Below are positions 17,475-45,638 of a DNA stretch of 64,000 nucleotides, in pieces. The notes beneath the pieces were generated by a model. It saw only the letters and a program-made list of their open reading frames with translations. It ran no database searches and was not told the origin of the DNA. The stretch comes from Haliotis rubra (Eukaryota): the NCBI RefSeq assembly GCF_003918875.1, contig NW_025766503.1:310001-374000 (forward strand), written 5' to 3'. A program made the translations under genes and the position numbers. How positions within the stretch are numbered: the stretch's first letter is position 1; each line of letters opens with the position of its first letter.

Positions 17475-17542
17475 GTAGGGACTTACCCTGCCATATGTGT
17501 CTGGTGGACATGTACTCTTAATATCAGTATCTAGCCCTTGGA

Positions 17543-17786
17543 GTGAGCGAGTGAATTTAGTTTTACGTCGCACTCAGCAATATTCCAGCTATATGGCGGC
17601 GGTCTGTAAATAATCAAGTCTGGACCAGACAGTCCAGTGATCATCAGCATGAGCATCTATCTACGCAATGGGGAACCGATGACACGTGTCAACTAAGTCA
17701 TCAAGCCAGACCACCCGATCCCGTTAGTCGCCTCTTACGACGAGCATGGGTTACTGATGATCAATTCTAACCCGGATCTTCACGGG
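17543..17786 (-). mobile_element. SINE-like retroposon (family B), full length, with a non-tRNA structured head
   Basis: 15-bp target-site duplication tatctagcccttgga (17528-17542 and 17787-17801), a (ctca)n-type tail, and homologues at 37265-37382, 49183-49663, about 51530-51685 and 56852-56899. Confidence 0.85.
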
Positions 17787-18258
17787 TATCTAGCCCTTGG
17801 AATGTCTAATTGAAGTTGAAATGGTGATTTCTGTTACTGCATGTTACTGACTGTACCTTTATTTACAAAGATGGCGTCTCACCATATTCTTATATAATTA
17901 ATGATGCAATTCAGGTTTCAGTTTTGAAATGTATTGTTTTACCTTGAATCCTCACATTTCACTCATTGCACTGAAGAACAATAACACTTATTTTGCAGTA
18001 TTGAACCACTGTATATCACAGCATCAAGTTAACTGTGGTGTAACCAGAGACCATTTGATCTTAAAGTGTTGGTTTGTTGTTGTTTAATGCCGCCGAGAAC
18101 AGTGTTCCAGCTTAAAGGGTCTCTGGGTATACAATTAACAGGTGCATGAAGATGCTGATAAATCATAAAATGGTTTGGTTTGGCTGTATTCTAGTATCTG
18201 ATCTGCAATTAAGGTAAGGAGGCCAAATTATAAGATCTTGTCTCTTTTCATCTTTCAG

Positions 18259-18436
18259 ACCTCTGATCTTGGTTTGACGGAGAACTATGGCGACAGTGGC
18301 TACAAGTTTGAGATTTGGTTTCGTCGGCGGTCTCTGGGAGAGAACTACATCCTTCAGGCTCAGAGCTCTGACGTGAAGCGGGCATGGGTACGGGACATTT
18401 CCAAGATGTTGTGGAAGCAGGCCATCAAGAACAGAG
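18259..18436 (+). CDS. PLEKHG4: RhoGEF PH domain exon 2
   Basis: TSDLGLTENYGDSGYKFEIWFRRR...YILQAQSSDVKRAWVRDISKMLWKQA. Bounded by cag and gtaaga. Confidence 0.95.
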
Positions 18437-20029
18437 GTAAGAAGGGGAGGTAACTCTAGCTCACTGAAGCTCTCTACCACCACCCTATCATTAGGGGAGG
18501 TTACTCCATGCGTTGGAGTGGGATGTACAGGTTTGCACCAGCCACCAGTGTTGAGTACTTGCTGAGGTACAGCTGAAACACTGCTGCATTGGCCAACGGG
18601 TTCCAGAAGAATGCTCTTTAAGGACTGAGATGCCTTCAGATTTCTTTGCATTTGAGAAAGTTTTGAAATTATTAAAACAATCTGCTCTAAGCCATAAGTT
18701 GAATGCCTTTTTTGTTTCACTGCAGAATATCGGTGAAGTTTGTCTTTGTGGTACTTGTCCAGATATTGTTGATATATTTTGAGAACTGATGGAACATTTA
18801 AAAGGATGTTGTTGCATATTTTTCATTATGTTCTCCACATAGTACAGGAGGCTACATGTTTGCATGTTTTATGGAATATCAATTTGTGTACTGATAGCTT
18901 GAAGAAGTTAACAGATATATGGGATTATATGTGCACTCTCCAGCATAAGCTTAATGACTAAGTTGTGGCACAATGCAATGGAAAACATTTTTTAAACTTG
19001 TCAAGAATCTTTATGGAGTCACACACTAATGGAACGTATTGACTGAAATTGATATTGTGGTCTAAACAATCTCTTTTCCATTATTGTTTTGCTTATGCTG
19101 GAGAGGCAACAAATAGTATTGTATATATTGATGGACAGAATATTAAGCCACATACTGCTACATATTTTATGTTAAATGATTTTTGCATAATGAATACAAA
19201 ATATGTCACTTCATTGAAAGAAACAGAGTTGAACATGAGCATCTGGTGTGTTCACAGCACTAGTAAACTGTCAACATTTTCTGGCGTACAACATGTTGTA
19301 GCACATGTTCTTCCACTTGTAGCTGTTCTTCCTTCCTTCCATCAGTGTGTGTATCTGTGTGTGTGTATAACTTAGTATTACTTCTTTGTGCCTAACTCTA
19401 ACATATTGTACTACATCTATATTCCCTTCCCTTCTCTTCCACTAATTATAATCCTTGGTGTCATCTGATTGGCTGGTCAAGTTGCCCCCAGTTCTAGATT
19501 AACCAATCAGATGCCATCATCACACTTGGCTCATTGGATGTTGTGAGGTTACATTGCTCATTTAACGACTTCCAACAGTTATATACCAGTATCAGAATAA
19601 TGGGGAAAATTTACTAACTTAAGAATTTCCAGTTAGTACATCATATTTGAAGCAGAGTTTGGTAATACACACAATGCTATAAGCTTACACTGAATAATTA
19701 AGGGGTTTAAGATCAACAATATTTTGATAATTATTATGAAGATCATCTCTTAGTGAACATGAATCACAAATATCAAGTTAACACAGCCATTTTGTGAACT
19801 GACAATATTGTTTTGATTAAGACCAAGAAGGATGAATAATAATTTCACAACTTGGAAAAGTACTAAATTACTATTTCTGAATTGCTACACTACTGCATAG
19901 AATATGTTTCTGCGATGATGTTTCGGACAGACGAGTGTACCTCACATCTCCAACACCCGAGCTGGCATGAGCATAGTGAAGTCTGTAGAGCTTTCCTCTC
20001 ACTGTCCCCCGTAATTTCTGTCCTAACAG

Positions 20030-20149
20030 AGGTGCGTCTTACAGAAATGGCCACGATGGGGGTTGGCAGTAAGCCTTGCCTGGATCTCAAACCCAGCGCT
20101 GACAACATACAGGATCGCTTCATCAACGTTGCTCTCGGCTCCAGGGGAT
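20030..20149 (+). CDS. PLEKHG4: RhoGEF post-PH exon (EVRLTEMATMGVGSKPCLDLKPSADNIQDR)
   Basis: Family-typical MGxGxKPxLDxKPS motif, phase 1-1, bounded by cag and gtaagt. Confidence 0.9.
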
Positions 20150-20269
20150 GTAAGTCATGGCAGACAGTTCAGATTGATTTTTCAAATATTATTTGATTGA
20201 GGCAATGAACAGTTGTAAGATAAAGGTGTTGTTTTATGTGGCAGCCTCTCTGGGTCAGCAGATATGACA

Positions 20270-21897
20270 TGTATGAGATACTGGGGACCTCTCCTACTTT
20301 GAGATCTAACCAGAATACTATTAAATGGAGTACTAGGGACTATCCTGCCCTGGGATTCCCACAGAGTACTGGGGACTATCCTGCCCTGAGATCCTAACAG
20401 AATACGAGGGACTATCCTGCCCTGGGATCCCCACAGAGTAAGAGGGACTATCATGCCCTGAGATCCTAACAGAATATGAGGGACTATCCTGCCCTGGGAT
20501 CCCCACAGAGTACTAGGGATTATCCTGCCATGAGATCCTAACAGAATATGAGGGACTATATCCTGCCCTGGGATTCCCACAGAGTAAGAGGGACTATCAT
20601 GCCCTGAGATCCTAACAGAATATGAGATGCCCTGGGATCCCCACAGAGTACTAGGGATTATCCTGCCATGAGATCCTAACAGAATATGAGGGACTATATC
20701 CTGCCCTGAGATTCCCACAGAGTAAGAGGGACTATCCTGCCCTGAGATCCTAACAGAATATGAGGGACTATCCTGCCCTGAGATTCCCACAGAGTACGAG
20801 GGACTATCCTGCCCTGAGATCCTAACATAATAATAGGGACTATCCTGCCCTGAGATCCCCACAGAGTACGAGGGACTATCATGCCCTGAGATCCCCACAG
20901 AGTACGAGGGACTATCATGCCCTGAGATCCTCACAGAGTACGAGGGACTATCATGCCTGGAGATCCCCACAGGGTAAGAGGGACTATACTGCCCTGAGAT
21001 CCTAACAGAATACTGAGGGACTATCATGCCCTGAGATCCCCACAGAGTACGAGGGACTATCTTGCCCTGAGATCCCCACAGAGTACTAGGGACTATCCTG
21101 CCCTGAGATCCTAACAGAATACTAGGGACTATCCTGCCATGAGTTTCCCACAGAGTACGAGGGACTATCCTGCCCAGAGATTCCCACAGAGTACGAGGGA
21201 CTATCCCCCTGAGATTCCCACAGAGTACGAGGGACTATCTTGCCCTGAGATCCTAACAGACTACTAGGGACTATCATGCCCTGAGTTTCCCACAGAGTAC
21301 TGGGGACTATCATGCCCTGAGATCCCCACAGCGTATGAGGGACTATCATGCCCTGAGATCCCCACAGCGTACGAGGGACTATCATGCCCTGAGATCCCCA
21401 CAGACTACGAGGGACTATCCTGCCCTGCGTTTCCCACAGAGTACGAGGGACTATCATGCCCTGAGATCCTAACAGACTACTAGGGACTGTCATGCCCTGA
21501 GATTCCCACAGAGTACTGGGGACTATCTTGCCCTGAGATCCTAACAGACTACGAGGGACTATCCTACCCTGAGATTCCCACAGAGTATGAGGGACTATCA
21601 TGCCCTGAGATCCTAACAGACTACTGGGGACTTTCCTGCCCTGAGATTCCCAGAGTACGAGGGACTATCCTGCCCTGAGATCCTAACAGAATACTTGGGA
21701 CTATCCTGGGAGTTTCCCACAGAGTACGAGGGACTATCATGCCCTTAAACCCCCACAGAGTACTGGGGACTATCTTGCCCTGAGATCCTAACAGACTACT
21801 AGGGACTATCCTGGCCTGAGATTCCCACAGAGTACGAGGGACTATCCTGCCCTGAGATTCCCACAGAGTAAGAGGGACTATCCTGCCCTGAGATCCC
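20270..21897. repeat. 36-bp minisatellite (gggactatcctgccctgagatccccacagagtacga) with two alternating variants
   Basis: About 45 units visible. Confidence 0.95.
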
Positions 21898-22005
21898 TGT
21901 CAGCCATTATGTATTGGTGTACTACATAACTTGCATTCTGTGACAGTACTCAAAACTCATTCCAAATTTTCATGTTAACAACCATAAATTCTCATAATAT
22001 TTCAG

Positions 22006-26885: not shown

Positions 26886-28091
26886 GATCAATGTACAGGC
26901 ACATCTTCACAATGGGTATAGATCGATGTACAGGCACATCCTCACAATGGGTATAGATCGATGTACAGGCACATCCTCACAATGGGTATAGATCAATGTA
27001 CAGGCACATCCCCACAATGGGTATAGATCGATGTACAGGCACATCCTCACAATGGGTATAGATCAATGTACAGGCACATCCCCACAATGGGTATAGATCA
27101 ATGTACAGGCACATCCCCACAATGGGTATAGATCAATGTACAGGCACATCCCCACAATGGGTATAGATCGATGTACAGGCACATCCCCACAATGGGTATA
27201 GATCGATGTACAGGCACATCCCCACAATGGGTATAGATCGATGTACAGGCACATCCCCACAATGGGTATAGATCGATGTACAGGCACATCCCCACAATGG
27301 GTATAGATCGATGTACAGGCACATCCCCACAATGGGTATAGATCAATGTACAGGCACATCCCCACAATGGGTATAGATCGATGTACAGGCACATCCTCAC
27401 AATGGGTATAGATCAATGTACAGGCACATCCCCACAATGGGTATAGATCAATGTACAGGCACATCCTCACAATGGGTATAGATCGATGTACAGGCACATC
27501 CTAACAATGGGTATAGATTCATGTACAGGCACATCCCCACAATGGATATAGATCAATGTACAGGCACATCCTCACAATGGGTATAGATCGATGTACAGGC
27601 ACATCCCCACAATGGGTATAGATCAATGTACAGGCACATCCCCACAATGGGTATAGATCAATGTACAGGCACATCCTCACAATGGGTATAGATCAATGTA
27701 CAGGCACATCCTAACAATGGGTATAGATCAATGTACAGGCACATCCTCACAATGGGTATAGATCAATGTACAGGCACATCCTAACAATGGGTATAGATCA
27801 ATGTACAGGCACATCCTCACAATGGGTATAGATCAATGTACAGGCACATCCTCACAATGGGTATAGATCAATGTACAGGCACATCCTCACAATGGGTATA
27901 GATCAATGTACAGGCACATCCTAACAATGGGTATAGATCAATGTACAGGCACATCCCCACAATGGGTATAGATCAATGTACAGGCACATCCTAACAATGG
28001 GTATAGATCGATGTACAGGCACATCCTAACAATGGGTATAGATCAATGTACAGGCACATCCCCACAATGGATATAGATCAATGTACAGGCA
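26886..28091. repeat. Homogeneous 35-bp minisatellite, about 34 copies, in the ALPK1 3' region
   Basis: Unit gatcaatgtacaggcacatccccacaatgggtata. It starts 30 bp past the ALPK1 stop codon. Confidence 0.97.
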
Positions 28092-28121
28092 TGTTGTGAC
28101 ACAGTGACCAGAGCAGGCCAT

Positions 28122-28526
28122 CTACTGCTGTGGTCTGGTCAGCCCAAGAGTTGAGCAGATACTGTTACACTGTGGGTGCACCTTGGACCAAAACAGTTTC
28201 ATTCCTTCCTCCTGCCTGTCTGCAGGGCTAAACCTGCGGAACCCCTTTGTGTGGAACTGGGGGTCAGTGAGATAGATGATGCCGTTTCCTTCCCTTGGGA
28301 TCCAGCCCTGGATGTCCACGATCATCAGCATTCCTTGGGACTCACAGAATGAGAAGTGTGTCAAGGCTGTGGCCAGCTCCTCTCCATGATGCTCCTTCTT
28401 GCAGAAGTCCAGGTTGTTGGTGAGCTTGATGAAATCTCCGTAGAGGTATGGCTCCACGTTTACCCAGTCTTCTAAGTGATCGTCTGGCGTCAGGAGCTGA
28501 AGATGGGCTGCCGGTAGGAACTGCAC
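28122..28526 (-). CDS. ALPK1: ALPK1 coding exon 9, alpha-kinase C-lobe and stop
   Basis: VEPYLYGDFIKLTNN, ALTHFSF, IVDIQGW, YLTDPQFH and HPQCNSIC (zinc ligands) are alpha-kinase motifs. atacag acceptor. Confidence 0.95.
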   Translation of the reverse strand: MQFLPAAHLQLLTPDDHLEDWVNVEPYLYGDFIKLTNNLDFCKKEHHGEELATALTHFSFCESQGMLMIVDIQGWIPREGNGIIYLTDPQFHTKGFRRFSPADRQEEGMKLFWSKVHPQCNSICSTLGLTRPQQ

Positions 28527-28859
28527 CTGTATCCATAACAACTTCAATGTTTCACATCAGTCCAAACTGTTCTTGACTTAGGTGCCATTTAACAGAAAAT
28601 TAGCATGCAAAGATTTTTCAGGTCATTATCCAGAAGTGATTCATACAGATGTCTATTTTTATCACTCAACTTTTATTTATTTACAAACCACTTGAAGTCA
28701 TTCCTGATTGAAAATGAACAGAAATAAGTAGAACTTGCACATGGTGCATTTAGGATAATTGTAAATGAAGTACATAGATCATGCACACAGTTAAACTGGG
28801 CCGAGGGTGCCACAAGTCTTGTTACAAATATCATGTTGTGCTTAATGACTGAAGCTCAC

Positions 28860-28992
28860 CTGGATGTTGCTGTGGTAGTTGTGGAGGGCTTGATTGAACC
28901 TGGTCACATAGTAGCCAGCCATCATCTGACACACCACATCCTGCTGGTAGTACCGTGCTGGGCGCTGCTGTCGGTACCGCTTGCAGACATAC
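28860..28992 (-). CDS. ALPK1: ALPK1 coding exon 8 (RYVCKRY...DVVCQMMAGYYVTRFNQAL)
   Basis: Contains the catalytic Lys motif YVxK. Bounded by tacag and gtgagc, phases 2-0 consistent. Not in the ORF track. Confidence 0.93.
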
Positions 28993-29520
28993 CTGTAGCC
29001 AGAGATATGCACATACCTGCATCAAGACACACAGACAAGTAGCTAGGTGCACAGAGGTTACCTGTAGCCAGACCAGTAGCTAGGTGCACAGAGGCTACCT
29101 GTAGCCAGAGATATGCACATGCCTGCATCAAGACCCACAGACCAGTATCTAGGCACACAGAGGTTACCTGCAGCCAGACCAGTAGCTAGGCACACAGAGG
29201 TTACCTGTAGCCAGACCAGTAGCTAGGTGCACAGAGGTTACCTGTAGCCAGAGATATACACATACCTGCATCAAGACCCACAGACCAGTAGCTAGGCACA
29301 CAGAGGTTACCTGTAGCCAGACCAATAGCTACGTGCACAGAGGTTACCTGTATCCGGACCAGTAGCTAGATGCACAGAGGTTACCTGTAGCCAGACCAAT
29401 AGCTACATGCACAGAGGTTACCTGTAGCCAGACCAATAGCTACGTGCACAGAGGTTACCTGTAGCCAGACCAGTAGCTAGGTGCACAGAGGTTACCTGTA
29501 GCCAGACCAATAGCTAGGTG
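28993..29520. repeat. Minisatellite of about 37 bp containing copies of the exon 8 acceptor
   Basis: acctgtagccaga (ctggctacag|gt on the - strand) is repeated more than 10 times. Confidence 0.9.
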
Positions 29521-29600
29521 AAGGGAGGTTGATGGAAGAAGTAGACTTCAAACACCACCTGACAGTTGCCCTACCTGCCCAGAGGTTCCTCATGATGGAG

Positions 29601-29771
29601 TGAGTGAGTGAGTATGGTTTTACGCCGCTTTTAGCAATGTTCCAGCAATATCACGGCGGGGGACACCAGACATGGGCTTCACACATTTGTGCCCATGTGG
29701 GGATTCGAACCCGGTTCTTCGGCGTGACGAGCGGGCGCTCTAACCACTAGACTACCCCACCACCCCCCCTT
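29601..29771 (-). mobile_element. tRNA-derived SINE (family A)
   Basis: A box tagtctagtgg, B box ggttcgaatcc, (ctca)n tail and 9-bp TSD atgatggag (29592-29600 and 29772-29780). Confidence 0.9.
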
Positions 29772-29817
29772 ATGATGGAGAAAGTAGACCTCAAACACCT
29801 CCTGACAGTTGCCCTAC

Positions 29818-29977
29818 CTGCCCAGAGGTTCCTCCTGATGGAGAAAGTAGACCTCAAACACCTCCCGACAGTTGCCCTTTCTGTTGCCTCCCAGGTCCAG
29901 CTCCTGTCCCGTGTGGACCAGTGTATTCTGAGACTGCCAGTCTCCTGTCACAGGGTTGTATGTCAGCAGCAGGGCCC
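29818..29977 (-). CDS. ALPK1: ALPK1 coding exon 7, alpha-kinase N-lobe (RALLLTYNPVTGDW...LHQEEPLGR)
   Basis: Matches vertebrate ALPK1 ALLLKY...LHQEEILGRYV. Bounded by tacag and gtaggg, 160 nt. Not in the ORF track. Confidence 0.93.
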
Positions 29978-30579
29978 CTGTAGTGGAACATTAGCATGGG
30001 GGTGTTACACCACAAAACAAAAGTAGGTAATCACATTCTGCAGTAAAAGGGATAATCAGCAACATTATGTGTCAATAATCCACAGGCAATTTGAAACTAA
30101 TTATGTGTAAACTAAGGTATTGCTCTACTGCTGTATTACCCTAACTGGGAGTTGTATTGGACTATCTGGCTATCTGGTCATCAAAATGTGGTTGGCCTTT
30201 CCTAAATGGGAAGTTTTGAGAAAAAGCAAAATACCTTTGTGTTTAAGTGTATATATTGTTTCAGCAGAATCAAACTACTCTCTAAGTGTACATGCAGATG
30301 ATGGATGATTCCATGTACATGAGAGGGGAGAATGTGTATGGTGCTTGTAGCCCATATGCTGTAAATAGGTAAGAGGCATTAGAATAAACTCTTAAGGAGG
30401 TCACTAACATTCACATAAAGGATTATGAGTTAATGGCATAACCTTGACAAGGTCCCAATGCAAAGAGAAAACTCAGTATTGGCAATGAAAAGCAAAACTA
30501 CTTTGCCAACAGTTATAAGTAAGGTTTAAGATTTAAATACTTCTAATCTGACAATAGAAGCATGTTTGATTGAACTCAC

Positions 30580-31843
30580 TATTTACTTTAATAGTCTCAT
30601 CCACTGTTGGCGGCATCCAGTGCTCCAGGTACTCCTCAGCACTCCTGGTTTCAACACTGTGACCAAACTGAAGGCTCTCCAGGGAGCTGTTTACTGTGGA
30701 GGAACGCAGATCCACCAGGGGAGATAACTCACCGATCTCAGACAGATTATGCCACTCCTCTGTGGGGGCAGACAGGTCCACATAAGAGGAGGAAGATCCA
30801 TTGGAGCTTTGCTGTGAGGGAGATGGGGAGAAACTATACCCAGACTCCCCAGATACTTTAGCAGAAGAGGAGGAAGCAGAGGACAGGCTTACTGATCCTG
30901 AACTAGATGAAGTGGACTTCCTTGAGGCTGAGCTGTCTGTCACTGATTTATCTGAGGAAGCAGAGGTGGAAGTCTGACTGGTAGATTGGGTAGTAGGTGC
31001 AATATTCTTGTCATCAAATACTCTCGAAATGTCTGGGTCTGAATTGAGATCAAGGTTGCTAAATTTCTCTGCAGTTGCACTTATGGAAACAACCGATAGA
31101 TTTACAAGTTCTGGATCCTCTGTGTGTTCATCTTGGCTGGAAGAGACCCCTGATTCAGATTGACTAGAAGAACCTGATGTTGTTGAGAATGAAGATGCAT
31201 CTACCGTTAGTCCTATATACTTCCTTGAGTACAAATCTGTAGCTTTGGGGTTCTGACTCTTTACAGCTCCTGGAAATGTGCCAGGATTCTGTCTGGAAGC
31301 AGGTGTCAAAGGATTCACCACAGCAGGAACTGTACCTGCTTTGTCTGACATGTGTTCTGCTTTTGATGACTCTTTAGAACAATCAGCTTTCCTTGCTGCT
31401 TTGTCCAAGGAGTCTTCTGATGATGATGCTGACAGTTCCACATTCATTGAGACATCATCAGTGCCTTGTAGTGAGGGTAATCCCAGAATGCCTAGTGATG
31501 CATTCATGAATGATACAGAGTTACTGGTATGTTCCAAGTTTGTCACAAGTTGACGTCTGCTCTGACAGGAACAAAGATGGCGGTACAGCTCAATACTGAT
31601 CTGCTCCAGGTACTTGGATAATGAACGGTCTTGTGGAAAGGGAGAAAAATATAAGGTCAAATGAATCAGGAAAATGGCTCTCACAAACTCAAAGTATGTT
31701 TCCAGACTTTTGAGATTGCTGACAGTTTCATGGGTAGTCAGAGTTTTCTTAATGTCTGCAACAATGGTCTGGAACCACTGGAACTCTCTCAAAGATGGTG
31801 GCTGTTGCAGAGCAAACATCAGCAAGGATTCCTCAGCAACAAG
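30580..31843 (-). CDS. ALPK1: ALPK1 coding exon 6, end of N-terminal domain plus long Ser-rich linker
   Basis: 1264 nt inside ORF 30533..31921. tttcag acceptor (phase 0) and gtgagt donor (phase 1) fit both neighbouring exons. Confidence 0.88.
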
Positions 31844-32406
31844 CTGAAACAATACAACCTGGGTTATGTTTGGCAGAAACGTAAACAGTACTATAGTACT
31901 TATAGTACTGTAACCCATCAAACAATATTTGGAATCATGCTTCCAGTTTACCTACATTGTCTTCCTGCATCATTCACTTCCTGCATCATTCACATTCTTC
32001 CTCTAAACTAGAATATACTTTATGGCAGTTTGCCATCACATATAACTATTGGAAACTTTGGAAGATCTCTCAATTACATGTCAGTAAGATGTAATCAATG
32101 GTGCCTTCTCAAAAACTAAAAGGCACACAGAGAGAGGATCAAACCTTGCTACATGCTACAAGTCAACAAATATGTCAAAGTGAAAATACATATGGACTTT
32201 GAATAAAGTCTGACAGAATATCACTAACCTGCCATGTCCAGAATAAGCAAACCTTTAGGTTTACTATGAAAACGTAATTGAATTTGTCCCCTAAAATCTG
32301 CAATCACTTGATTCTGTTGGCCCCACAGAACCTATTCTATCAGAGTGCTGAGACATTAAGTCCTTGGATTAAATATCTAGCTTCAGCTCATGTCTTCATC
32401 ACTCAC

Positions 32407-32672
32407 TTGATGTTTGGCAATGTAGAGAGTCTGTCCCAGATCTTTAATGTATTTGACAGCATCCATTCCCTTTAAATATGCCTCGTAGCAGGGATGAGAC
32501 TGGGAGAAGAGTGCAGGGTACTTTTGTTTCATTTCGTTGTAGTCAGCCACAGTAAGCCTTTTCAGGCATTTGGTGAGAAGTCCAAGGGAGGAGGATGTTC
32601 CCTTGTCATCATGGATCTTGTTGAAGGAATCAACCGATTCTACCAAAGGCTCAATAGCATCTTTCCACATTC
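32407..32672 (-). CDS. ALPK1: ALPK1 coding exon 5 (GMWKDAIE...DDKGTSSSLGLL)
   Basis: Aligns with human GMWYEAAE...PDKKGLSTSLGIL. Bounded by tttag and gtgagt. Confidence 0.92.
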
Positions 32673-33274
32673 CTAAACACAGTAAAAACAAACTAGGGAC
32701 CTCAAGGTATATCTATTATCATGCATGTTATTTTTAAGAACAATTCTTCCATTTTTTACGTTACTAATATTTCAAAAACAATTCATGTGTGTTACTTGTT
32801 TATCAAACAAAAACTTGATCTGAATTGAAATGTTGTGCCAAATTGTATATGTCATGTGAATTACGGTTTTGAATTGGTCCCCAGTAACTCCAGCTTGTTG
32901 TAAGAGGCTTAGTGACATGGCACCACATCCTCTCAATGACAGACAGGCTCCCAACTCATAGCTGTAATACTGGCTGTAGTGTTAAACATCAAACAGATCA
33001 TGTTACCACAAGTTACCAATCTGCCTGTTTCCCAGCCATTGCTGTAGATTCCCCTTACTATATCGCACTACTTGTGCATGGACTGCAGTAAATCAAACAC
33101 TTTAACACAGACATTCTACTGAGACAAGATAAAACAGGATCCCTATCAGATGCCCAAATCCTGGTCAAGAATACTGCCTTGCATGCACACCAGTCAGAAT
33201 TGAAGAACCTTTCTTATCATCTGTATCAGACAGTTTCAGTGGACCATTGATCAAAGAATAAAATACAAACATAC

Positions 33275-33364
33275 CTAGATTGTGAAGTATATGACCCTTA
33301 ATCTGGACACAAACAGCCTTGACATTGTTGTATTGGTCATCATCTTTGTAGTCCCACACACTTT
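33275..33364 (-). CDS. ALPK1: ALPK1 coding exon 4 (ESVWDYKDDDQYNNVKAVCVQIKGHILHNLG)
   Basis: Aligns with human W-Y...VQSVCIQIRGQILQKLG. Bounded by cttccag and gtatgt, 90 nt. Confidence 0.9.
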   Translation of the reverse strand, partial: KVCGTTKMMTNTTMSRLFVSRLRVIYFTI

Positions 33365-34807
33365 CTGGAAGACAAGAAACCAATTCATCACCTTTGTAGT
33401 CCCACACACTTTCTGGAAGACAAGTCCCAAACCAATTCATCACCTTTGTAGAAACCAATTCATCATCTTTAGTCCCACACTTTGAAGACAAGAACCACCA
33501 TCCCACACTTTCTGGAAGACAAGAAACAATTCATCTTTAGTGGTCCCACAAGACAAGAAACCAATTCATCATCTTTGTAGTCCCACACACTTTCTGGAAG
33601 ACAAGAAACCAATTCATCATCTTTGTAGTCCCACACTTTCTGGAAGACAAGAAACCAATTCATCATCTTTGTAGTCCCACACTTTCTGGAAGACAAGAAA
33701 CCAATTCATCATCTTTGTAGTCCCACACACTTTCTGGAAGACAAGAAACCAATTCATCATCTTTGTAGTCCCACACTTTCTGGAAGACAAGAAACCAATT
33801 CATCATCTTTGTAGTCCCACACACTTTCTGGAAGACAAGAAACCAATTCATCATCTTTAAAGTCCCACACACTTTCTGGAAGACAAGAAACCAATTCATC
33901 ATCTTTGTAGTCCCACACACTTTCTGGAAGAAAAGAAACCAATACATCATCTTTGTAGTCCCACACTTTCTGGAAGACAAGAAACCAATACATCATCTTT
34001 GTAGTCCCACACTTTCTGGAAGACAAGAAACCAATACATCATCTTTGTAGTCCCACACTTTCTGGAAGACAAGAAACCAATTCATCATCTTTGTAGACCC
34101 ACACACTTTCTGGAAGACAAGAAACCATTTCATCATCTTTAAAGTCCCACACTTTCTGGAAGACAAGAAACCATTTCATCATCTTTGTAGTCCCACACTT
34201 TCTGGAAGACAAGAAACCATTTCATCATCTTTAAAGTCCCACACTTTCTGGAAGACAAGAAACCATTTCATCATCTTTGTAGTCCCACACTTTCTGGAAG
34301 ACAAGAAACCAATTCATCATCTTTAAAGTCCCACACTTTCTGGAAGACAAGAAACCATTTCATCATCACTTTTGGAAATTTCATCTAAGAAACCATTTCA
34401 TCATCTTTAAAGTCCCACACTTTCTGGAAGACAAGAAACCATTTCATCATCTTTAAAGTAGACACCTGGAAGACACACTTTCTAAAGGACAGACAGACAG
34501 AAACCATTTCATCATCTTTAAAGTCCCACACTTTCTGGAAGACAAGAAACCATTTCATCATCTTTAAAGTCCCACACTTTCTGGAAGACAAGAAACCATT
34601 TCATCATCTTTAAAGTCCCACACTTTCTGGAAGACAAGAAACCATTTCATCATCTTTGTAGTCCCACACTTTCTGGAAGACAAGAAACCATATCATCATC
34701 TTTAAAGTCCCACACTTTCTGGAAGACAAGAAACCATTTCATCATCTTTGTAGTCCCACACTTTCTGGAAGACAAGAAACCAATACATCATCTTTGTAGT
34801 CCCACAT
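33337..34807. repeat. 46/48-bp minisatellite made of the exon 4 acceptor plus exon start, about 30 copies
   Basis: The - strand unit is attggtttcttgtcttccag|aaagtgtg(tg)ggactacaaagatgatga. Confidence 0.95.
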
Positions 34808-35393
34808 AGTATACTACTGATCACAATTTGCTAAGGATCACAAAAATCCACAACTTTACTTAAATGTAGATTCATAATTTGAAATTGTATCCATATAAAA
34901 CTGTTTAAATAATAACATGGTAAGCCCTCTCTAGGCAAACAGTCACTTTAATCTAACCTTATGCACTTGATACATGAGTAACCATAAAAATGGTTTTCAT
35001 GGCACCAATCAACCATTTCGCAAATCATGGAAAGAGTCATTGACAAGTACACAACACCTGTCAATAGCAGGTATTGGATCCACAAGATGAAAAGACACAC
35101 CGAAACCTAGGATCCATGCTTACAATAAGCTTAGATATTTAAATCCAATTTGAACCCACATCATAGTTTTCTGTTGAATCCATGATTTGATCCTTAGCAA
35201 AGTGTGAATAGCATATTTGGAAACGAGAGACCATTACATCATGTTTACAGTTTTACAGATTTTAGAAAACAACAACAGGAGAGACTAGTATATCATCTTG
35301 AAGGTCACAAATGCTCACTAAAAAAACAAGAGAGCTTTAATATAATGATGTCAGATGAATCATGAAGTATGTACACGAGTGAATCCACTTTAC

Positions 35394-35640
35394 CCCTTGT
35401 TATGACAGCATCCAGGACACGGACAGCTCCGTGAAGGTCACCATCATCTTTCATGACCCGAGCCTTCCTGATGATGACTTGTGGCGCCACTGGCGTGTGG
35501 GGCCCTCCGTCCAGGAGGATGTCCAACACTCGCAGCAGGGCCCTGGAGGCCCCAAACCTGTATGCAGCTCTGTCTACCACATAGATGAGTGCTGCCATGG
35601 TCACCAAGTCATCTGCTCCTGCTGCCTTTGCTATGCATCT
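35394..35640 (-). CDS. ALPK1: ALPK1 coding exon 3 (VVDRAAY...PVAPQVIIRKARV)
   Basis: Aligns with human LVDRFLY...PIAPQVVIRQARI. Bounded by tttag and gtaaag. Confidence 0.93.
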
Positions 35641-36522
35641 CTAAACAAACACATATTCAATATGGATTCTGTAGTTACCATGTTCAAGACAAATGTATGT
35701 ATGGGATTTTATTACCCTTAAGATAAATTTGTTGAATTCTGATTGGTCAATAACCATTGCATACAAAATCATGTAGGCAGATTAGCCAGGGTGTACGAAC
35801 TGTACGAATCTGTCACTTGACACACTACATTGGGTGTACAAACGACCTTGACCTTAGACAGAATGTGGCCGCCAAACAGCTTATCGCTTCAGAATTTTAG
35901 AGTTGGCATATACAATTATGAGTATAAACAAAGTAATAAAATTGTTGCCATAATTTCTTATTTGTTTGCTTCAATAAAAATATAAAAAAAGGAAAATGTT
36001 TCTGTATTTCAGTTATTGTTTAACAAAAAAAAGGAGAATTCGATCATTTTATCATAAACTAAGCCATCATGAGCTATCTCCCTTTATGTGACTGTTGACT
36101 GTTTGATTAAACATACAATATAAAGTTTGTCGTTTTTGTTATTTTCTATTGAATGTTGTTTTTTTAAGATAAGCTAAATAAAGAGATCATAAGAGTAATA
36201 CATTTGTTACACAGTGTTTTGAAAGGGTGGGCGGTAGGACTGTAACGATACATCGAACTATCAATGGATTGCAATTGTTGAGTCTCCGATAGCAATTAAT
36301 CAATGGTAGAAATGAAAGTGGGTGGGACTGTAAGGCCCTTTAACTAATAATGTACTGGGATTATCCAGTTTCATCATCATTTGCCTCTTAGTTACAGAGG
36401 ACAGTTTTAAAATCTATGACAGAATATAACATAACATATTCTGTTCGTGTCAAATAGACGTAAGGATGTTTGAATAAAAAATGAATTGGAGAAACTTTTT
36501 GAAAAGAAATCCAATTTCTTAC

Positions 36523-36737
36523 ATAGAGAATCTCAATATGGTTCATGCGTGGTAGAGTGTCATTGGTTTCAGCCATCATTTCAGGGGTGACATCTGGTGG
36601 AAGAAATGGTCGCTCCTGATGTAGTGCTAACTGGATCATATCAGAGATATTGCTAGGCAACAGTGACAGCCAAGTTTGAAGATTCCTGTCTTGAGATGTG
36701 CCTTCACTAGCCTCCCCATAGACCTGCCGGAGAAGCT
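36523..36737 (-). CDS. ALPK1: ALPK1 coding exon 2 (...LLPSNISDMIQLALHQERPFLP...)
   Basis: Resembles human [22 protein letters not shown]. Bounded by ttccag and gtaaga, phases 1-0. Confidence 0.85.
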
Positions 36738-37264
36738 CTGGAAATTCCAAAATTCAGTTTCAGGTGACAAGCAAATATTAGTTTCAGTGATTCTGCTCAT
36801 CTTCTCAACCAGATGGAGATACAATCTCAGGATGCCAAACATAAACATTTAATCATGAGACATATAGAATATCACCTGTCTCTCAGGATATCGACAATAT
36901 CACTTCCATCTTTAGACAGACAGACATACAGAATCTCACCTGTATTTGGGGATATCAAATATAACACTTCCATCATCACACAGACATACTACACTGGCTA
37001 CATTGGACAGTGGGAGACACTACTGGCAGGTTACCGTACGTCTGCATCATTTGGGCTTACCTCCCACATTCAACTTACATACCATTGGTTAACTGGACTA
37101 CTGTAAAAAGCAGTATTGATCCCAACTCACTCACTCATAATGATACTGTACTGTATCGAAAATCAGTTACAAGAACTAAAGTAATACCTCTGTTTGATGA
37201 GAGTACATGTATAATTTGATGTTCAACCTCCAGATAGACTAGAGGAAAGAACTGACAAGTCACT

Positions 37265-37382
37265 TTGGGATATGATGACATGTGTCAACCAAGTCAATGA
37301 GCCTGACCACCCGATCCCGTTAGTTGCCTCTTATAACAAGCATTGGTTAGTGAAGATCAATTCTAACCCGGATCTTCACGGG
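37265..37382 (-). mobile_element. Family B SINE, 5' part
   Basis: Same 5' end (cccgtgaagatccgggttagaa) as the copy ending at 17786. Confidence 0.8.
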
Positions 37383-37459
37383 TATCAAGGCAGAAGAAAA
37401 TACTCCTTAAATGTAAACTGGCATGTTCTATAGATAATAACATTAACTGTTGCACTCAC

Positions 37460-37514
37460 CACCATCTTGAATTGTTTCTAGCTTGAAGATGTCCAGAATT
37501 TCTTTTTCTGCCAT
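37460..37514 (-). CDS. ALPK1: ALPK1 coding exon 1 (MAEKEILDIFKLETIQDG)
   Basis: aacATGG Kozak context, open frame to a gtgagt donor, and phase 1 matching exon 2. The coding exons sum to 2835 nt (944 aa plus stop). Confidence 0.7.
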
Positions 37515-38847: not shown

Positions 38848-40148
38848 TAGTATGACCAGAAATTATTGAGAATTTTAGGAATATGTTTAATTGGATTTCT
38901 AGTATAAACAACCGTGACCAGCTATCAAGTGCTTGGTTTAATTCAAGAGAGACAACTCCGTTAATCCTTTTTCATTAGTTTGTGAAGAGTTATCCCCCCT
39001 TTGTTTACTTGCTAGCAGACGACGTTTTCAATGATCCTCAGTATGGATGATTTAGAGAAGAGGAAGTTGATTTCAGAGTATTATAACAAGGACATCAGAT
39101 CAGCTAAAGTGATTTCAAGTAAAACAGGCATCCCTTTGTCCACTGTTTATCGTGTTTTGAAAAATATTGCAAATGGATATGGCATTGAGCACCAGGGAGG
39201 CGCAGGTAGGCCCAGAAAATTGACTGTCGATGACAGGAGGCGGCTTGGTATTCTTGTTTCTAAAAACAAACGATGGAGTTTAGAAAACTTAAGGCTGGAT
39301 ATGATTGATAGAGGAACTGTGGCTGTCTGTAAGGAGACAATTAGAACTGAGCTGCAATGGGTTGGCAGAAAAGTCGAGGAATTCCATCACCGATCATGAA
39401 ACCTGAACAAAAGGAGCGAAGGTTGAACTGGTGCTTAAAGCATAGAAATTGTAACTGGGACAATGTGTTTTCAATTCTCAGATGAAAGTTCTGTGTGGCT
39501 GTTTCCTAATATACTGAAATTCTGGACCAAACAAACTGAAAAACCTTTGTATCAGCGCCCAATATACAGTCCGAAATTTAATGTGTGGGGTGGCATATCT
39601 GTGTTAGGGGCAATGCCCCTCTGTGTATTTGAAGGAAATATGAACAGTGAGCGGTACACAGATATTCTCGAGGGACATTTACTTCCATCTGATCACGTGT
39701 TCTATGGAAATGTTTGGATTTTCCAGCAGGATAACGACCCAAAACATCGTTCAAAGCATTCACAGGCCTGGTTTCGGACCCAAAATATGACATTATTAGA
39801 TTGGCCAAGCTATAGCCCTGACCTAAATCCAATAGAAAATGTTTGGGGACTTATGAAGGAAAGTGTCAATAAGAAAATACTGACAAATATTGCTGAAATG
39901 AAAGAAGAGGTGGTCCAATATTGGGACAGCATGGACCACGACTTTCTAACTTCTTTGATCAGTAGTATGCCCCGCCGCATTGAAGCCTGCATTGCTGCCC
40001 ATGGTGACTTGACAAAATACCAACTGTTCACCTGTCTTTGAATCTGGAGTTATGTTCTACTAATATTCACATTTAATACGCGAGTAATGAGTGAAAAAAA
40101 AAAAAAAAATTACAATCTTTAAATTCTCAATAATTTCTGGTTGTACTG
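38848..40148 (+). mobile_element. Tc1-family DNA transposon, full length (1301 bp)
   Basis: 28-bp TIRs with 3 mismatches (tagtatgaccagaaattattgagaattt and aaattctcaataatttctggttgtactg). TA is present on the right flank only. Confidence 0.93.
39043..40041 (+). pseudogene. Frameshifted Tc1 DD34E transposase
   Basis: HTH plus GRPRK, FSDES, VWGGIS and QQDNDPKH...SPDLNPIENVW with 34 residues between D and E. Split over ORFs 39031..39399 and 39463..40041. Confidence 0.92.
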
Positions 40149-42042: not shown

Positions 42043-42233
42043 NNNNNNNNNNNNNNNNNNNNNNNNNNNNNNNNNNNNNNNNNNNNNNNNNNNNNNNNNN
42101 NNNNNNNNNNNNNNNNNNNNNNNNNNNNNNNNNNNNNNNNNNNNNNNNNNNNNNNNNNNNNNNNNNNNNNNNNNNNNNNNNNNNNNNNNNNNNNNNNNNN
42201 NNNNNNNNNNNNNNNNNNNNNNNNNNNNNNNNN
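42043..42233. other. Assembly gap (N run)
   Basis: Run of Ns. Confidence 1.
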
Positions 42234-42565: not shown

Positions 42566-43878
42566 GGGTAAGAGTTCCGCCCGTAACCCCCGCTTAAAAA
42601 GTATTTATATAAAATCTATTTATTATGATTATTTCAAGGGGTTAGGGTTTAGGTTTAGGGTTTAGATTCGGCATTATGTTAGCTAGGTTTTGGGTTAGGG
42701 TTAGGATAGGCTTTCTATAAAAAACATCTATTCTTACTATAAATCTTAGCAGAGACCATATAATAGATATAATATATATAATATATATATAATATATTAT
42801 ATGGCCCCTTTTAAGCAATAAATATACAATTTCAAAACCCATTAGCCATGTTATATTGTAAAACTACATATTTTAATATACATGTACATTAAATGTACGT
42901 TAAGCTTGCATAATTTATGTTTTGTATATTCAGATTACTATGAACGTACAACATTTCAAGGTAAAACAAGAAAACAAAATTTACAATTTTTGCCTACATG
43001 AAATATGCAGAAATTTAAAATATATATATTTTAGATTTATTAAATAACTGCTCCCGTCTCTACTACAATCTCTACTCTGCTAAGTCAGGTGAAGTATCAT
43101 TATCTGTTGTTTCAGTCCAGTGCTCTTCCTGGGCTATCCTATTACCTAAAAAGGGGTGATTAGGAGTTGTTGTTTTAACAATGTGTGGTAGTATTGGGAT
43201 GTGAAAGTTTTTGGATGTGAAAGTTTAATATAGTCCGTCATGAGCTATCGATGATGATGACATGTCAATGATGATGCCATTGTTTAGTAGCACATCTCAG
43301 GTAATGAAAACCTGCATGCAACGTCTACAGTGGTGTTTTGCTCGACGAAAGCAGGTTCCTGCCTCATGTTTTGGATGGTCGTCTGAGAGCTGTGTGTCGT
43401 ACATTCAACCTGCTGTTCCCTTTCATGGAGGCTCGATTATGGTGTGGGGCTGTGTCTCCCACCCATGACTGCAAATTGACATTGGTGATTGGGAAATCGT
43501 AATTGCCAGTGCTACGTCACTGACGTTCATGATCACGTTGTTGTGCGTCAGTTTGATAACCACCCACCATTGGCTACCCGCCCAATATTCTTGGACATTA
43601 ATGCCTTCCACATCGCCCCGTGCTGTGGGAGAGATTTGCGGGATATATACTCTTAAAAAAGCAACAACTTGACATGAGAACAATTAAATTTTAGAAAAAT
43701 ATTTGACACAAACCAATCCATGAATCCCAAAATGCGGAGGAATGGTTGCCGACGACATAATGTTTAAAAAAAGCAACGTGGAACAAAAACGTAACGTTTA
43801 TATATAATATATTATATGGTCTCTGATCTTAGGAATAGAACGATAATAAAACGGGGGTTACGGGCGGAAATCTTTCCC
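42566..43878. mobile_element. MITE with 27-bp TIRs and 6-bp TSD, containing a captured 1-kb segment
   Basis: TIR gggtaagagttccgcccgtaacccccg (25/27 match), gataat on both flanks (42560-42565 and 43879-43884), and an internal (ttaggg)-like tract. Confidence 0.8.
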
Positions 43879-45638
43879 GATAATGTATTTAGCGTGCGTG
43901 TTGTGTGTGTGCGTGCGTGCGTGTGTTGTGCTCTTAACCTACAATGGTCTTAAGTGCAACCATTGTAAGTTTAAGGGCACGGCATATGTTAGATGCACTC
44001 CGGCTGATGCAATACTGTCCCCAATTCACCCACATTTTGTACAGGAGGGACCCTTGCCTGCAAACCACGACCAAGAATGGGCTCGATGGGGTTCAGATCA
44101 GTTGCAGGCCAAGGGAGAGTCTCAATATATGCTCTTCAAAAAAGGAAACTTGTCATTCTGTTTTGGAGTTTATATACAGAGTGCATATAACTGATTCAAA
44201 CATGGCATCATTGCTCAATTACAGTAAAATCATCACTTTACAAATTTCCAAAACATGATTATCTAGAAGTGTTCAGTAAAACCACAGAGGGCTATATCCA
44301 CTTGGTCAGAGTAAAATGTCAGTATCTGGTGTGACCACCATGAGCATCGATAACAGCTTGGCGGCGACGACCCATAGCAGAAAGGAGATGCCGAATGTTG
44401 TCTTGAGAAATGTTTTGCTACTCTTGAAGTGCTGCGTGCAGTTCCTGTAGTGTCTGAGGTGGCGGATTACGTGAACGAAGATGTCTGAACCGGGTGTAGC
44501 GATTCTAGGCGGCGGTGGTAACTCTAGGTCGACCTGACCTGGCTCTGTCATCAACACTCCCAGGATTGTTGTATCGGGTACACAATTTCATCATGCACTT
44601 GCGTTCCATGTAGGGTGCGGCGTAGCGATTGACTACAAACGTGAGTGTAACGTTACGTTTTTGTTCCACGTTGCTTTTTTTAAACATTATGTCGTCGGCA
44701 ACCATTCCTCCGCATTTTGGGATTCATGGATTGGTTTGTGTCAAATATTTTTCTAAAATTTAATTGTTCTCATGTCAAGTTGTTGCTTTTTTAAGAGTAT
44801 ATATCCCGCAAATCTCTCCCACAGCACGGGGCGATGTGGAAGGCATTAATGTCCAAGAATATTGGGCGGGTAGCCAATGGTGGGTGGTTATCAAACTGAC
44901 GCACAACAACGTGATCATGAACGTCAGTGACGTAGCACTGGCAATTACGATTTCCCAATCACCAATGTCAATTTGCAGTCATGGGTGGGAGACACAGCCC
45001 CACACCATAACCGAGCCTCCATGAAAGGGAACAGCAGGTTGAATGTACGACACACAGCTCTCAGACGACCATCCAAAACATGAGGCAGGAACCTGCTTTC
45101 GTCGAGCAAAACACCACTGTAGACGTTGCATGCAGGTTTTCATTACCTGAGATGTGCTACTAAACAATGGCATCATCATTGACATGTCATCATCATCGAT
45201 AGCTCATGACGGACTATATTAAACTTTCACATCCAAAAACTTTCACATCCCAATACTACCACACATTGTTAAAACAACAACTCCTAATCACCCCTTTTTA
45301 GGTAATAGGATAGCCCAGGAAGAGCACTGGACTGAAACAACAGATAATGATACTTCACCTGACTTAGCAGAGTAGAGATTGTAGTAGAGACGGGAGCAGT
45401 TATTTAATAAATCTAAAATATATATATTTTAAATTTCTGCATATTTCATGTAGGCAAAAATTGTAAATTTTGTTTTCTTGTTTTACCTTGAAATGTTGTA
45501 GAGAATCTGAATATACAAAACATAAATTATGCAAGCTTAACGTACATTTAATGTACATGTATATTAAAATATGTAGTTTTACAATATAACATGGCTAATG
45601 GGTTTTGAAATTGTATATTTATTGCTTAAAAGGGGCCA
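42802..45638. repeat. Near-identical inverted repeat of about 1 kb (arms 42802-43798 and 44649-45638)
   Basis: The arms are reverse complements. I saw one small indel and one substitution, and the ORF pairs 43262/44979 and 43423/44764 mirror each other. Confidence 0.95.
44300..45185 (-). pseudogene. Decayed Tc1/mariner transposase fragments
   Basis: GSVDDRARSGRPRVTT and PFHGGSVMVWGCVS motifs, with many stops and frameshifts. Confidence 0.7.

What the first reader, a model, noticed from the sequence alone, without database searches (positions are those of the whole stretch)
28122..37514. Complete invertebrate ALPK1 with the ADP-heptose pocket residues largely conserved
Seen: nine phase-consistent exons give an N-terminal helical domain, a Ser-rich linker and an alpha-kinase domain. 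Established: human ALPK1 senses bacterial ADP-heptose through its N-terminal domain (including R116, R150, R153, D231, K233, S236/T237) and phosphorylates TIFA to activate NF-kB. By-eye alignment finds VVDR (R116), IIRKAR (R150/R153), DDKGTSS (D231, K233, S236, with T237 as S), PF (F61) and Y for F295, while the Q67 region has diverged. Inference: this apparently molluscan animal may have cytosolic nucleotide-sugar sensing, possibly with altered sugar specificity. The pathway is mostly studied in vertebrates.
Basis: partly seen in the sequence, partly recalled or inferred. Interest (0 to 1): 0.72.

Follow-up and report, generated by a model that had tools for sequence, protein, structure and literature searches.

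The report
Abalone ALPK1 sugar-sensor kinase gene
This abalone gene is an intact, expressed relative of human ALPK1, the kinase that detects the bacterial sugar ADP-heptose, and it keeps nearly all ligand-contacting residues although recent papers say ALPK1 exists only in vertebrates.

Summary
A nine-exon, all GT-AG gene on the minus strand (37514 to 28122) encodes a 944-aa protein. It is 92.7% identical to RefSeq 'alpha-protein kinase 1-like' of Haliotis asinina. Spliced public contigs join exons 9-8, 7-6-5 and 5-4 at the predicted borders.

The N-terminal 420 residues match the human ALPK1 ligand-binding domain by sequence and by predicted fold (TM 0.70-0.76). The kinase domain scores 174 bits against human ALPK1, against 64 for eEF2K.

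Equivalents of F61, R116, R150, R153, D231 and K233 are invariant in 25 family members, from molluscs, an annelid, a nemertean and amphioxus to mammals. T237 is Ser, F295 is Tyr, and the Q67 loop is deleted in molluscs. A sister clade of mollusc paralogues has lost R116, R153 and K233. Pocket retention here is therefore specific, not a by-product of general similarity. dN/dS is 0.11 (sensor domain) and 0.08 (kinase).

The gene is most likely a cytosolic NDP-heptose receptor kinase. Ligand and substrate are untested.

Automated annotation already names it in congeners, so it is a new member of a known kind. It contradicts three papers that restrict ALPK1 to vertebrates. This scan earlier noted a TIFA-like gene elsewhere in this genome.

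The parts
37460..37514 (-). Exon 1 with the start codon (aa 1-18), ending in phase 1
   Evidence: The ATG is at 37514 and the donor is GTGAGT. tblastn of P0001 aligns residues 1-19 here.
36523..36737 (-). Exon 2 (aa 19-90). Holds the F61 equivalent (F63, codon starting at 36606) and the site of the Q67-loop deletion
35394..35640 (-). Exon 3 (aa 91-172). Holds the equivalents of R116 (R114, codon at 35571), R150 (R148, 35469) and R153 (R151, 35460)
   Evidence: phmmer against 5z2c_A gives E 1.6e-9 over human residues 101-196.
33275..33364 (-). Exon 4 (aa 173-202)
   Evidence: AG acceptor and GTATGT donor. A spliced contig, X1 record 5, joins it to exon 5.
32407..32672 (-). Exon 5 (aa 203-291). 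Holds the equivalents of D231 (D224, codon at 32610), K233 (K226, 32604), S236 (S229, 32595), T237 (S230, 32592) and F295 (Y286, 32424)
   Evidence: Spliced contigs join it to exons 4 and 6.
30580..31843 (-). Exon 6 (aa 292-712): the rest of the helical sensor domain plus the Ser-rich linker
   Evidence: Spliced contigs X18 record 17 and X3 record 22 cover it whole and join it to exons 5 and 7.
29818..29977 (-). Exon 7 (aa 713-765): N-terminal part of the kinase domain
   Evidence: tblastn of P0001 residues 713-765 gives 94% identity. It is joined to exon 6 in RNA contigs.
28860..28992 (-). Exon 8 (aa 766-810). Holds the ATP-binding Lys (K770, equivalent to human K1067, codon at 28982) and the V1092 equivalent (V795)
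   Evidence: Pfam Alpha_kinase, alignment to the human kinase domain, and K1067 and V1092 identified from published primers.
28122..28526 (-). Exon 9 (aa 811-944 plus TAG stop). Holds the DIQG catalytic motif (D881), TDPQ (D898) and the zinc ligands H867, H927, C930 and C934
   Evidence: Pfam Alpha_kinase E 4.5e-26.. It is joined to exon 8 in RNA contigs.

Best explanation
This is a functional, transcribed abalone (Haliotis) member of the ALPK1 family. It is a co-orthologue of vertebrate ALPK1. Shown: the gene is intact, it is spliced as modelled at four of its eight introns (4, 5, 6 and 8), and it is under purifying selection. It has the ALPK1-specific N-terminal helical domain followed by a disordered Ser-rich linker and an ALPK1-type alpha-kinase domain. 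All catalytic and zinc-binding residues are present. The phosphate- and heptose-contacting pocket residues are conserved. Inferred: the N-terminal domain binds a cytosolic nucleotide-diphosphate-heptose, either ADP-heptose or a CDP/UDP analogue, released by bacteria. Binding would relieve or reorganise the contact between the N-terminal and kinase domains and switch on the kinase. The kinase would then phosphorylate an FHA-domain adaptor of the TIFA type, which oligomerises and engages TRAF6 and NF-kB. Because the Q67 loop near the nucleotide base is deleted and T237, L235 and F295 are substituted, base preference or fine sugar selectivity may differ from the human receptor.
For: Gene model: nine GT-AG exons and 944 aa. 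Spliced contigs in three runs join exons 9-8, 7-6-5 and 5-4 at the predicted borders, while a DNA run covers the introns. The protein is 92.7% identical to RefSeq ALPK1-like of H. asinina and has the same convergent RhoGEF neighbour. dN/dS against H. asinina is 0.11 for the N-terminal domain, 0.08 for the kinase domain and 0.35 for the linker, at dS 0.21. N-terminal domain: phmmer to 5Z2C gives E 3.4e-26 and the family profile gives E 1.9e-146 over human residues 1-437. The AF2 model has pLDDT 89.4, and its top 11 Foldseek hits are all ALPK1 N-terminal domains at TM 0.70-0.76; the next hit has E 3e-3. Kinase domain: 174 bits to human ALPK1, against 64 for eEF2K, 36 for MHCK and 26 for TRPM7. 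K1067, V1092, DxQG, TDPQ and the H/H/C/C zinc ligands are conserved. Pocket: the F61, R116, R150, R153, D231 and K233 equivalents are invariant in 25 sequences across five phyla. R150A, R153A and K233A abolish ADP-heptose activation in human ALPK1, and the T237 hydroxyl acts as a gatekeeper; Ser keeps that hydroxyl. Natural control: a sister clade of mollusc paralogues with a homologous N-terminal domain (31% identity, E 7e-55) has replaced R116, R153, K233, S236 and T237.
Against: No binding or activity data exist for any invertebrate ALPK1. The Q67 loop is missing in all mollusc members, and the role of Q67 rests on my recollection of Zhou et al. 2018. No residue-level 3D superposition on the ligand was possible, because the tools do not release model coordinates. 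No TIFA-like gene lies in the window, and I could not retrieve the abalone TIFA candidate that another scan note reports. Abalone carries at least three paralogues, so this copy need not be the main sensor. No non-ALPK1 outgroup could be fetched for the trees.
Confidence: 0.68

Rival explanations
1. It is a genuine ALPK1-family receptor kinase tuned to a different small ligand. That ligand could be another nucleotide sugar, possibly one made by the animal or its symbionts, rather than bacterial ADP-heptose.
For: The Q67 loop is deleted in all molluscs, by about 13-15 alignment columns. L235 is Thr, T237 is Ser and F295 is Tyr. In human ALPK1, single changes at T237 or S277 open the pocket to UDP-mannose, ADP-ribose and GDP-mannose; the S277 position appears to be Glu in abalone by my hand reading of the profile alignment. 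Published work reports heptose biosynthetic enzymes in some protostomes. The family has diversified in molluscs, including pocket-divergent paralogues.
Against: The diphosphate clamps (R116, R150, R153, K233) and the sugar contact D231 are invariant, and Ser keeps the gatekeeping hydroxyl. Human ALPK1 already accepts ADP-, CDP- and UDP-heptose in a common binding mode, so base contacts appear permissive. Lamprey and Polypterus ALPK1 also have Ser at position 237.
Confidence: 0.2
2. It is an ALPK1-like kinase with a non-immune, ligand-independent cellular role. On this reading the N-terminal domain is conserved for structural or autoinhibitory reasons only.
For: No immune or ligand data exist for invertebrates, and no TIFA gene is adjacent in abalone.
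Against: Residues that matter only for ligand contact are invariant over more than 500 million years, yet they are freely replaced in the sister paralogue clade, which keeps the same fold. In the annelid Owenia an FHA-domain gene sits 4.6 kb upstream in divergent orientation.
Confidence: 0.09
3. It is a decaying gene copy or an annotation artefact.
For: Three introns carry tandem copies of exon ends, which could disturb splicing.
Against: The ORF is intact, all splice sites are canonical, spliced transcripts are present in three runs, and dN/dS is 0.16 overall.
Confidence: 0.03

Closest known systems
Human ALPK1 (PDB 5Z2C, 8ZD3, 9J4P)
   Same: It has the same three-part architecture. The N-terminal domain aligns over human residues 1-437 through the family profile, and the predicted fold matches at TM 0.70-0.76. 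The kinase domain matches at E 3e-50. F61, R116, R150, R153, D231, K233, S236, K1067, V1092 and the catalytic and zinc residues are conserved.
   Different: It is 944 aa rather than 1244 aa, with a shorter linker. N-terminal domain identity is only about 22-24%. The Q67 loop is deleted. T237 is Ser, L235 is Thr, K232 is Asp and F295 is Tyr; S277 appears to be Glu by my hand reading of the profile alignment. Ligand and substrate are unproven.
RefSeq 'alpha-protein kinase 1-like' of Haliotis asinina (P0001) and H. rufescens (P0083)
   Same: These are direct orthologues, at 92.7% and about 85-90% identity. Exon order is the same, as is the convergent RhoGEF neighbour. Pocket residues are identical except at position 232.
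   Different: They come from different species (dS 0.21 to H. asinina). Intron 4 is 0.6 kb here against 16 kb in H. asinina. They are named only by an automated pipeline, and no paper in the searched library discusses them.
Mollusc pocket-divergent ALPK1-like paralogues (e.g. H. rufescens P0133, Littorina P0134, Nucella P0135)
   Same: They have a homologous N-terminal domain (31% identity) and a kinase domain 54-59% identical. They form the sister clade in both the kinase-domain and N-terminal-domain trees.
   Different: They have replaced R116, R153, K233, S236 and T237, so they are unlikely to bind NDP-heptose in the same way. The window gene keeps them all.
eEF2K, MHCK A and the TRPM7 kinase domain (other alpha-kinases)
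   Same: They share the alpha-kinase catalytic fold and the Pfam PF02816 match.
   Different: Kinase-domain similarity is much lower (64, 36 and 26 bits against 174). None has the ALPK1 N-terminal sensor domain.

Membership tests
ALPK1 (alpha-protein kinase 1) | C-terminal alpha-kinase catalytic domain (Pfam PF02816) | tested here: met
   Exons 8 and 9 hit PF02816 at E 3e-5 and 4.5e-26. The orthologue P0001 hits it at E 3.7e-38 over profile positions 2-185.
ALPK1 (alpha-protein kinase 1) | Kinase domain closer to ALPK1 than to any other alpha-kinase | tested here: met
   The PDB search gives 174 bits for the ALPK1 kinase domain, 64 for eEF2K, 49 for 4kuj, 36 for MHCK and 26 for TRPM7. There is no outgroup-rooted tree, because no outgroup sequences could be fetched.
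ALPK1 (alpha-protein kinase 1) | N-terminal all-helical ligand-binding domain homologous to 5Z2C | tested here: met
   phmmer gives E 3.4e-26 and the profile gives E 1.9e-146. The AF2 model with Foldseek gives TM 0.70-0.76 to ALPK1 N-terminal domains only.
ALPK1 (alpha-protein kinase 1) | Pocket residues that contact the diphosphate and heptose (R116, R150, R153, D231, K233, S236, T237 hydroxyl, F61, aromatic at 295) | tested here: met
   All are present. T237 is Ser and F295 is Tyr.
ALPK1 (alpha-protein kinase 1) | Q67-bearing 'WQY' loop next to the pocket | tested here: not met
   The loop is deleted in every mollusc sequence. It is present in the annelid, nemertean, amphioxus and vertebrate sequences. 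Its weight as a defining feature rests on recollection of Zhou et al. 2018.
ALPK1 (alpha-protein kinase 1) | Catalytic competence: ATP-binding Lys (K1067), DxQG, TDPQ and zinc ligands | tested here: met
   K770, D881, D898, H867, H927, C930 and C934 are present.
ALPK1 (alpha-protein kinase 1) | Kinase activation by ADP-heptose or another NDP-heptose | not testable with these tools
   This needs binding and kinase assays.
ALPK1-TIFA pathway | A TIFA-type FHA adaptor in the same genome | tested here: inconclusive
   None lies in the 64-kb window. An earlier scan note reports one elsewhere in this genome, which I did not verify. In Owenia an FHA gene lies 4.6 kb from the ALPK1-like gene, but it has no phmmer hit to TIFA in the PDB.

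The most novel reading that the evidence does not exclude
NDP-heptose sensing by ALPK1 is an ancient bilaterian pathway rather than a vertebrate invention. In molluscs it has expanded into a small family of cytosolic metabolite receptors. Pocket-intact copies, such as this gene and paralogue B, would sense heptose nucleotides. Because they lack the Q67 loop, they may have a shifted base or sugar preference. A sister clade with a rebuilt pocket would sense something else or act as regulators. This would overturn the published scenario in which ALPK1 arose in vertebrates after deuterostomes lost heptose synthesis.
Probability: 0.35. Interest if true: 0.8.

Novelty: new member of a known kind. 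Interest (0 to 1): 0.6.

Why it matters
Three recent papers say that ALPK1, and with it TIFA, occurs only in vertebrates. One builds an evolutionary story on that claim. This gene and its relatives in gastropods, a chiton, cephalopods, an annelid, a nemertean and amphioxus show otherwise. The two-domain receptor, with an invariant ligand pocket, predates vertebrates. That makes heptose sensing directly testable in invertebrate immunity, including in farmed abalone exposed to Vibrio. The pocket-intact and pocket-divergent paralogues also form a natural mutational series for studying ligand specificity. That question is medically relevant, because human ROSAH mutations act by loosening specificity. 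Pfam has no model of the sensor domain, which may explain why domain-based surveys missed these genes.

Tried and rejected
1. I first read exon 3 through to 35308, because HMMER aligned the read-through peptide weakly to human 178-196. I rejected this. The GT donor at 35393 joined to exon 4 gives a better match (W-Y motif and VCVQIKG) and agrees with P0001.

2. I looked for the N-terminal kinase exon among long ORFs. It was found only with the orthologue as a guide.

3. Hunt for TIFA:
- tblastn of the Owenia FHA protein against the window found nothing.
- A word search with the same protein found nothing.
- The neighbours of amphioxus, electric eel, Danio and lamprey ALPK1 showed no FHA gene, or no DNA was served.
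- The Atlas search gave only a lead, with a TIFA cluster as second hit at 0.95, tied with a bacterial FHA cluster.

4. I sought outgroup alpha-kinases for a rooted tree through a kinase-region search. It returned only ALPK1-family proteins.

5. The AU test of mollusc monophyly without the octocoral sequence is confounded by the weak placement of cephalopods. I do not use it.

6. Zhou et al. 2018 is not held in the library. The full pocket list is therefore partly from memory. R150, R153, K233 and T237 are documented.

7. Residue-level superposition on the ligand was not possible, because model coordinates are not exposed.

8. The window protein itself could not be handed to the tools, because it is spliced and has no reference. 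The 92.7%-identical P0001 served as proxy for the fold and the PDB searches.
Full report
**Observation.** The minus strand between 37514 and 28122 carries nine exons. Their coordinates are 37514-37460, 36737-36523, 35640-35394, 33364-33275, 32672-32407, 31843-30580, 29977-29818, 28992-28860 and 28526-28122. All eight introns are GT-AG and the phases agree. Translation gives 944 residues ending in TAG. A search of 1.84 billion protein representatives with exon 3 returned a 943-aa protein, P0001, that aligns exon by exon to the window. It is 92.7% identical over its full length. The source names P0001 'alpha-protein kinase 1-like [Haliotis asinina]', and a 946-aa H. rufescens protein is about 85% identical. 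The window therefore comes from another abalone species.

**Expression.** Logan contigs of three runs (X1, X3, X18) contain spliced pieces. They join 28100-28523 to 28857-28989, join 29835-29976 to 30579-31843 to 32407-32671, and join 32477-32671 to 33274-33365. These are exons 9-8, 7-6-5 and 5-4, matching the predicted borders to within 1-3 bases. Run X15 covers introns as well and is genomic. Exons 7 and 8 were not bridged, because contigs break near a very abundant tRNA-type SINE at 29598-29745.

**Selection.** I rebuilt the H. asinina coding sequence from its locus. It translates exactly to P0001. Nei-Gojobori dN/dS is 0.11 for the N-terminal domain, 0.35 for the linker and 0.08 for the kinase domain, at dS 0.21. 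The convergent RhoGEF neighbour is shared with H. asinina.

**Identity of the two domains.**
- Exons 8 and 9 match Pfam Alpha_kinase.
- The kinase region of P0001 hits the solved human ALPK1 kinase domain at E 3e-50 (174 bits). eEF2K scores 64 bits, MHCK A 36 and TRPM7 26.
- The alignment conserves the ATP-binding lysine. I identified this residue independently as K1067 from the published mutagenesis primer, which encodes LGRYVGRDYKE.
- It also conserves V1092, the DxQG and TDPQ motifs and the His/His/Cys/Cys zinc ligands.
- Exon 3 alone hits the human ALPK1 N-terminal domain (5Z2C) at E 1.6e-9.
- Residues 1-420 of P0001 hit it at E 3.4e-26 over human residues 29-260.
- A profile of 25 family members aligns to human residues 1-437 at E 1.9e-146.
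- An AlphaFold2 model of P0001:1-430 has mean pLDDT 89.4 and pTM 0.84.
- Its only strong Foldseek matches in the PDB are eleven ALPK1 N-terminal chains (5Z2C, 8ZD3, 9J4P; TM 0.70-0.76, E about 1e-14). Next come generic TPR-like repeats at E 3e-3.
- Pfam has no model for this domain, even in a mammalian ALPK1.

**The pocket.** In the HMMER alignments the equivalents of human F61, R116, R150, R153, D231, K233 and S236 are identical. T237 is Ser, L235 is Thr and K232 is Asp. By the 25-sequence alignment and its profile match, F295 is Tyr. The six residues WQYKQA that contain Q67 have no counterpart.

Across 25 sequences, F61, R116, R150, R153, D231 and K233 are invariant columns. Those sequences cover gastropods, a chiton, an octopus, the annelid Owenia, the nemertean Lineus, amphioxus, lamprey, fishes, coelacanth and mammals. 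Published work shows that R150A, R153A and K233A abolish activation by ADP-heptose. It also shows that the T237 hydroxyl is a gatekeeper whose loss admits human nucleotide sugars. Ser keeps that hydroxyl and is also found in lamprey and Polypterus.

The WQY/WQF loop is present in vertebrates, amphioxus, Owenia and Lineus. It is deleted in all mollusc sequences. Human ALPK1 binds ADP-, CDP- and UDP-heptose in a common mode. Base recognition therefore appears permissive, but the deletion could still shift preference.

**A natural control.** A kinase-region search revealed that molluscs carry several ALPK1-like genes. Haliotis has at least three: A (this gene, P0001, P0083), B (P0129, P0128, P0024) and C (P0133). 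Maximum-likelihood trees were built separately for the kinase domain and the N-terminal domain.
- Both group the window gene with the A genes (100/99 in the kinase tree, 100 in the N-terminal tree).
- Both place A and B in a 'canonical' gastropod clade (99/97; 98).
- Both recover a sister clade (100/98; 100) that includes Haliotis C, second copies from Littorina, Nucella, Babylonia and Batillaria and, in the kinase tree only, bivalve genes.

In that sister clade the pocket is rebuilt. A pairwise BLASTP of P0133 against P0001 (31% identity over 352 residues, E 7e-55) shows several changes: F61 to Cys, R116 to Gln, R153 to Glu, K233 to Asp, S236 to Ile and T237 to Val. Pocket conservation in the window gene is therefore not a side effect of fold conservation.

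**Mechanism.** Shown: an intact, expressed, constrained ALPK1-type protein with a complete catalytic site and a near-complete heptose-nucleotide pocket. Inferred from the vertebrate pathway: ligand binding in the N-terminal domain activates the kinase, which phosphorylates a TIFA-type FHA adaptor that signals through TRAF6 to NF-kB.

The substrate step is the weakest.
- No FHA gene lies in the window.
- In Owenia a 445-aa gene sits 4.6 kb upstream of the ALPK1-like gene in divergent orientation. It has a Pfam FHA domain (E 9e-7) and a C-terminal PEESDE, which fits my recollection of the TRAF6-binding consensus.
- That Owenia gene has no phmmer match to TIFA in the PDB and yielded no relatives by word search.
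I could not retrieve it and treat it as a lead only.

**Comparison with what is known.** Automated annotation already calls these genes 'alpha-protein kinase 1(-like)' in many invertebrates. The gene is thus not new to databases. In the searched literature the only mention of an invertebrate ALPK1-like gene is incidental, in an Acropora genome-duplication paper. No paper discusses sensor function or pocket conservation.

Three papers state the opposite of what is seen here.
[quoted passage not shown] - A commentary says that ALPK1 appeared in vertebrates after deuterostomes lost heptose synthesis (PMC11461863).

The evidence here contradicts those statements for protostomes and amphioxus.

**Caveat on range.** The octocoral Dendronephthya sequence nests inside gastropods as sister of Haliotis B in both trees. 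It may be contamination or gene transfer, so I do not claim a cnidarian origin.

**Verdict.** The gene is a new member of a known kind. Interest is moderate to high, because it contradicts a published distribution and opens a testable invertebrate heptose-sensing pathway.

Noticed in passing
window 33550-34806 (intron 3): A 46-bp tandem array of about 27 units. Each unit copies the exon 4 acceptor (TTGTCTTCCAG) and the first codons of exon 4 (ESVWDYKDD). It is already logged by the scan as s1-329632.
   Followed up: partly
window 29032-29520 (intron 7), reaching 28990: A tandem array (periods 37, 106 and 143 bp) whose units repeat the exon 8 acceptor context (CTGGCTACAG|GTATG). This is the second intron of the gene with a minisatellite built from an exon border.
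   Followed up: no
window 29517-29817 (intron 7): Two extra partial copies of the 3' end of exon 7 (peptide GNC.EVFEVYF.H) lie just downstream of the real donor. The second copy is interrupted by a tRNA-type SINE at about 29598-29745. That SINE is enormously abundant in the runs, with summed contig depth up to 1.5e7.
   Followed up: partly
window 26886-28091: A 35-bp minisatellite with 34.5 copies at 96% match starts 31 bp after the stop codon. RNA contig X1 record 1 extends 331 nt beyond position 28100, so part of the array is probably 3' UTR.
   Followed up: no
window about 9500-22000, plus strand: A DH-PH RhoGEF gene convergent with ALPK1. DH-like peptide lies at 9515-9934 and PH-like peptides at 17283-17531 and 18202-18450. 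H. asinina has the same neighbour, annotated with KIAA1755_N, RhoGEF and PH domains.
   Followed up: partly
window 39016-40038 and 43244-45203: A mariner/Tc1-like transposase ORF lies at 39016-40038. Between 43244 and 45203 there is a pair of near-identical ORF-bearing segments in inverted orientation (43244-43683 and 44764-45203). An assembly gap of N lies at 42043-42233 and was left untouched.
   Followed up: no
P0087 (Dendronephthya gigantea ALPK1-like; scaffold of 37.9 kb): This octocoral protein nests inside gastropod ALPK1 as sister of Haliotis paralogue B in both the kinase-domain and N-terminal-domain trees. It also shares the mollusc-type loop deletion. Contamination of the coral assembly by a mollusc, or gene transfer, is suspected.
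   Followed up: partly
L002:4033-5370 (Owenia fusiformis): A single-exon 445-aa FHA-domain gene lies 4.6 kb upstream of the annelid ALPK1-like gene in divergent orientation. It ends in PEESDE, which fits the TRAF6-binding consensus as I recall it. It is a candidate invertebrate TIFA analogue.
   Followed up: partly
P0062 (Sorex fumeus ALPK1), alignment A1 column of human T237: The shrew sequence shows Met at the position of human T237, the commonest ROSAH substitution. Octopus and Patella vulgata show Tyr there. This was not checked against other shrew sequences.
   Followed up: no
L005 (H. asinina locus) against window intron 4: Intron 4 is about 16 kb in H. asinina but 0.6 kb in the window species.
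   Followed up: no
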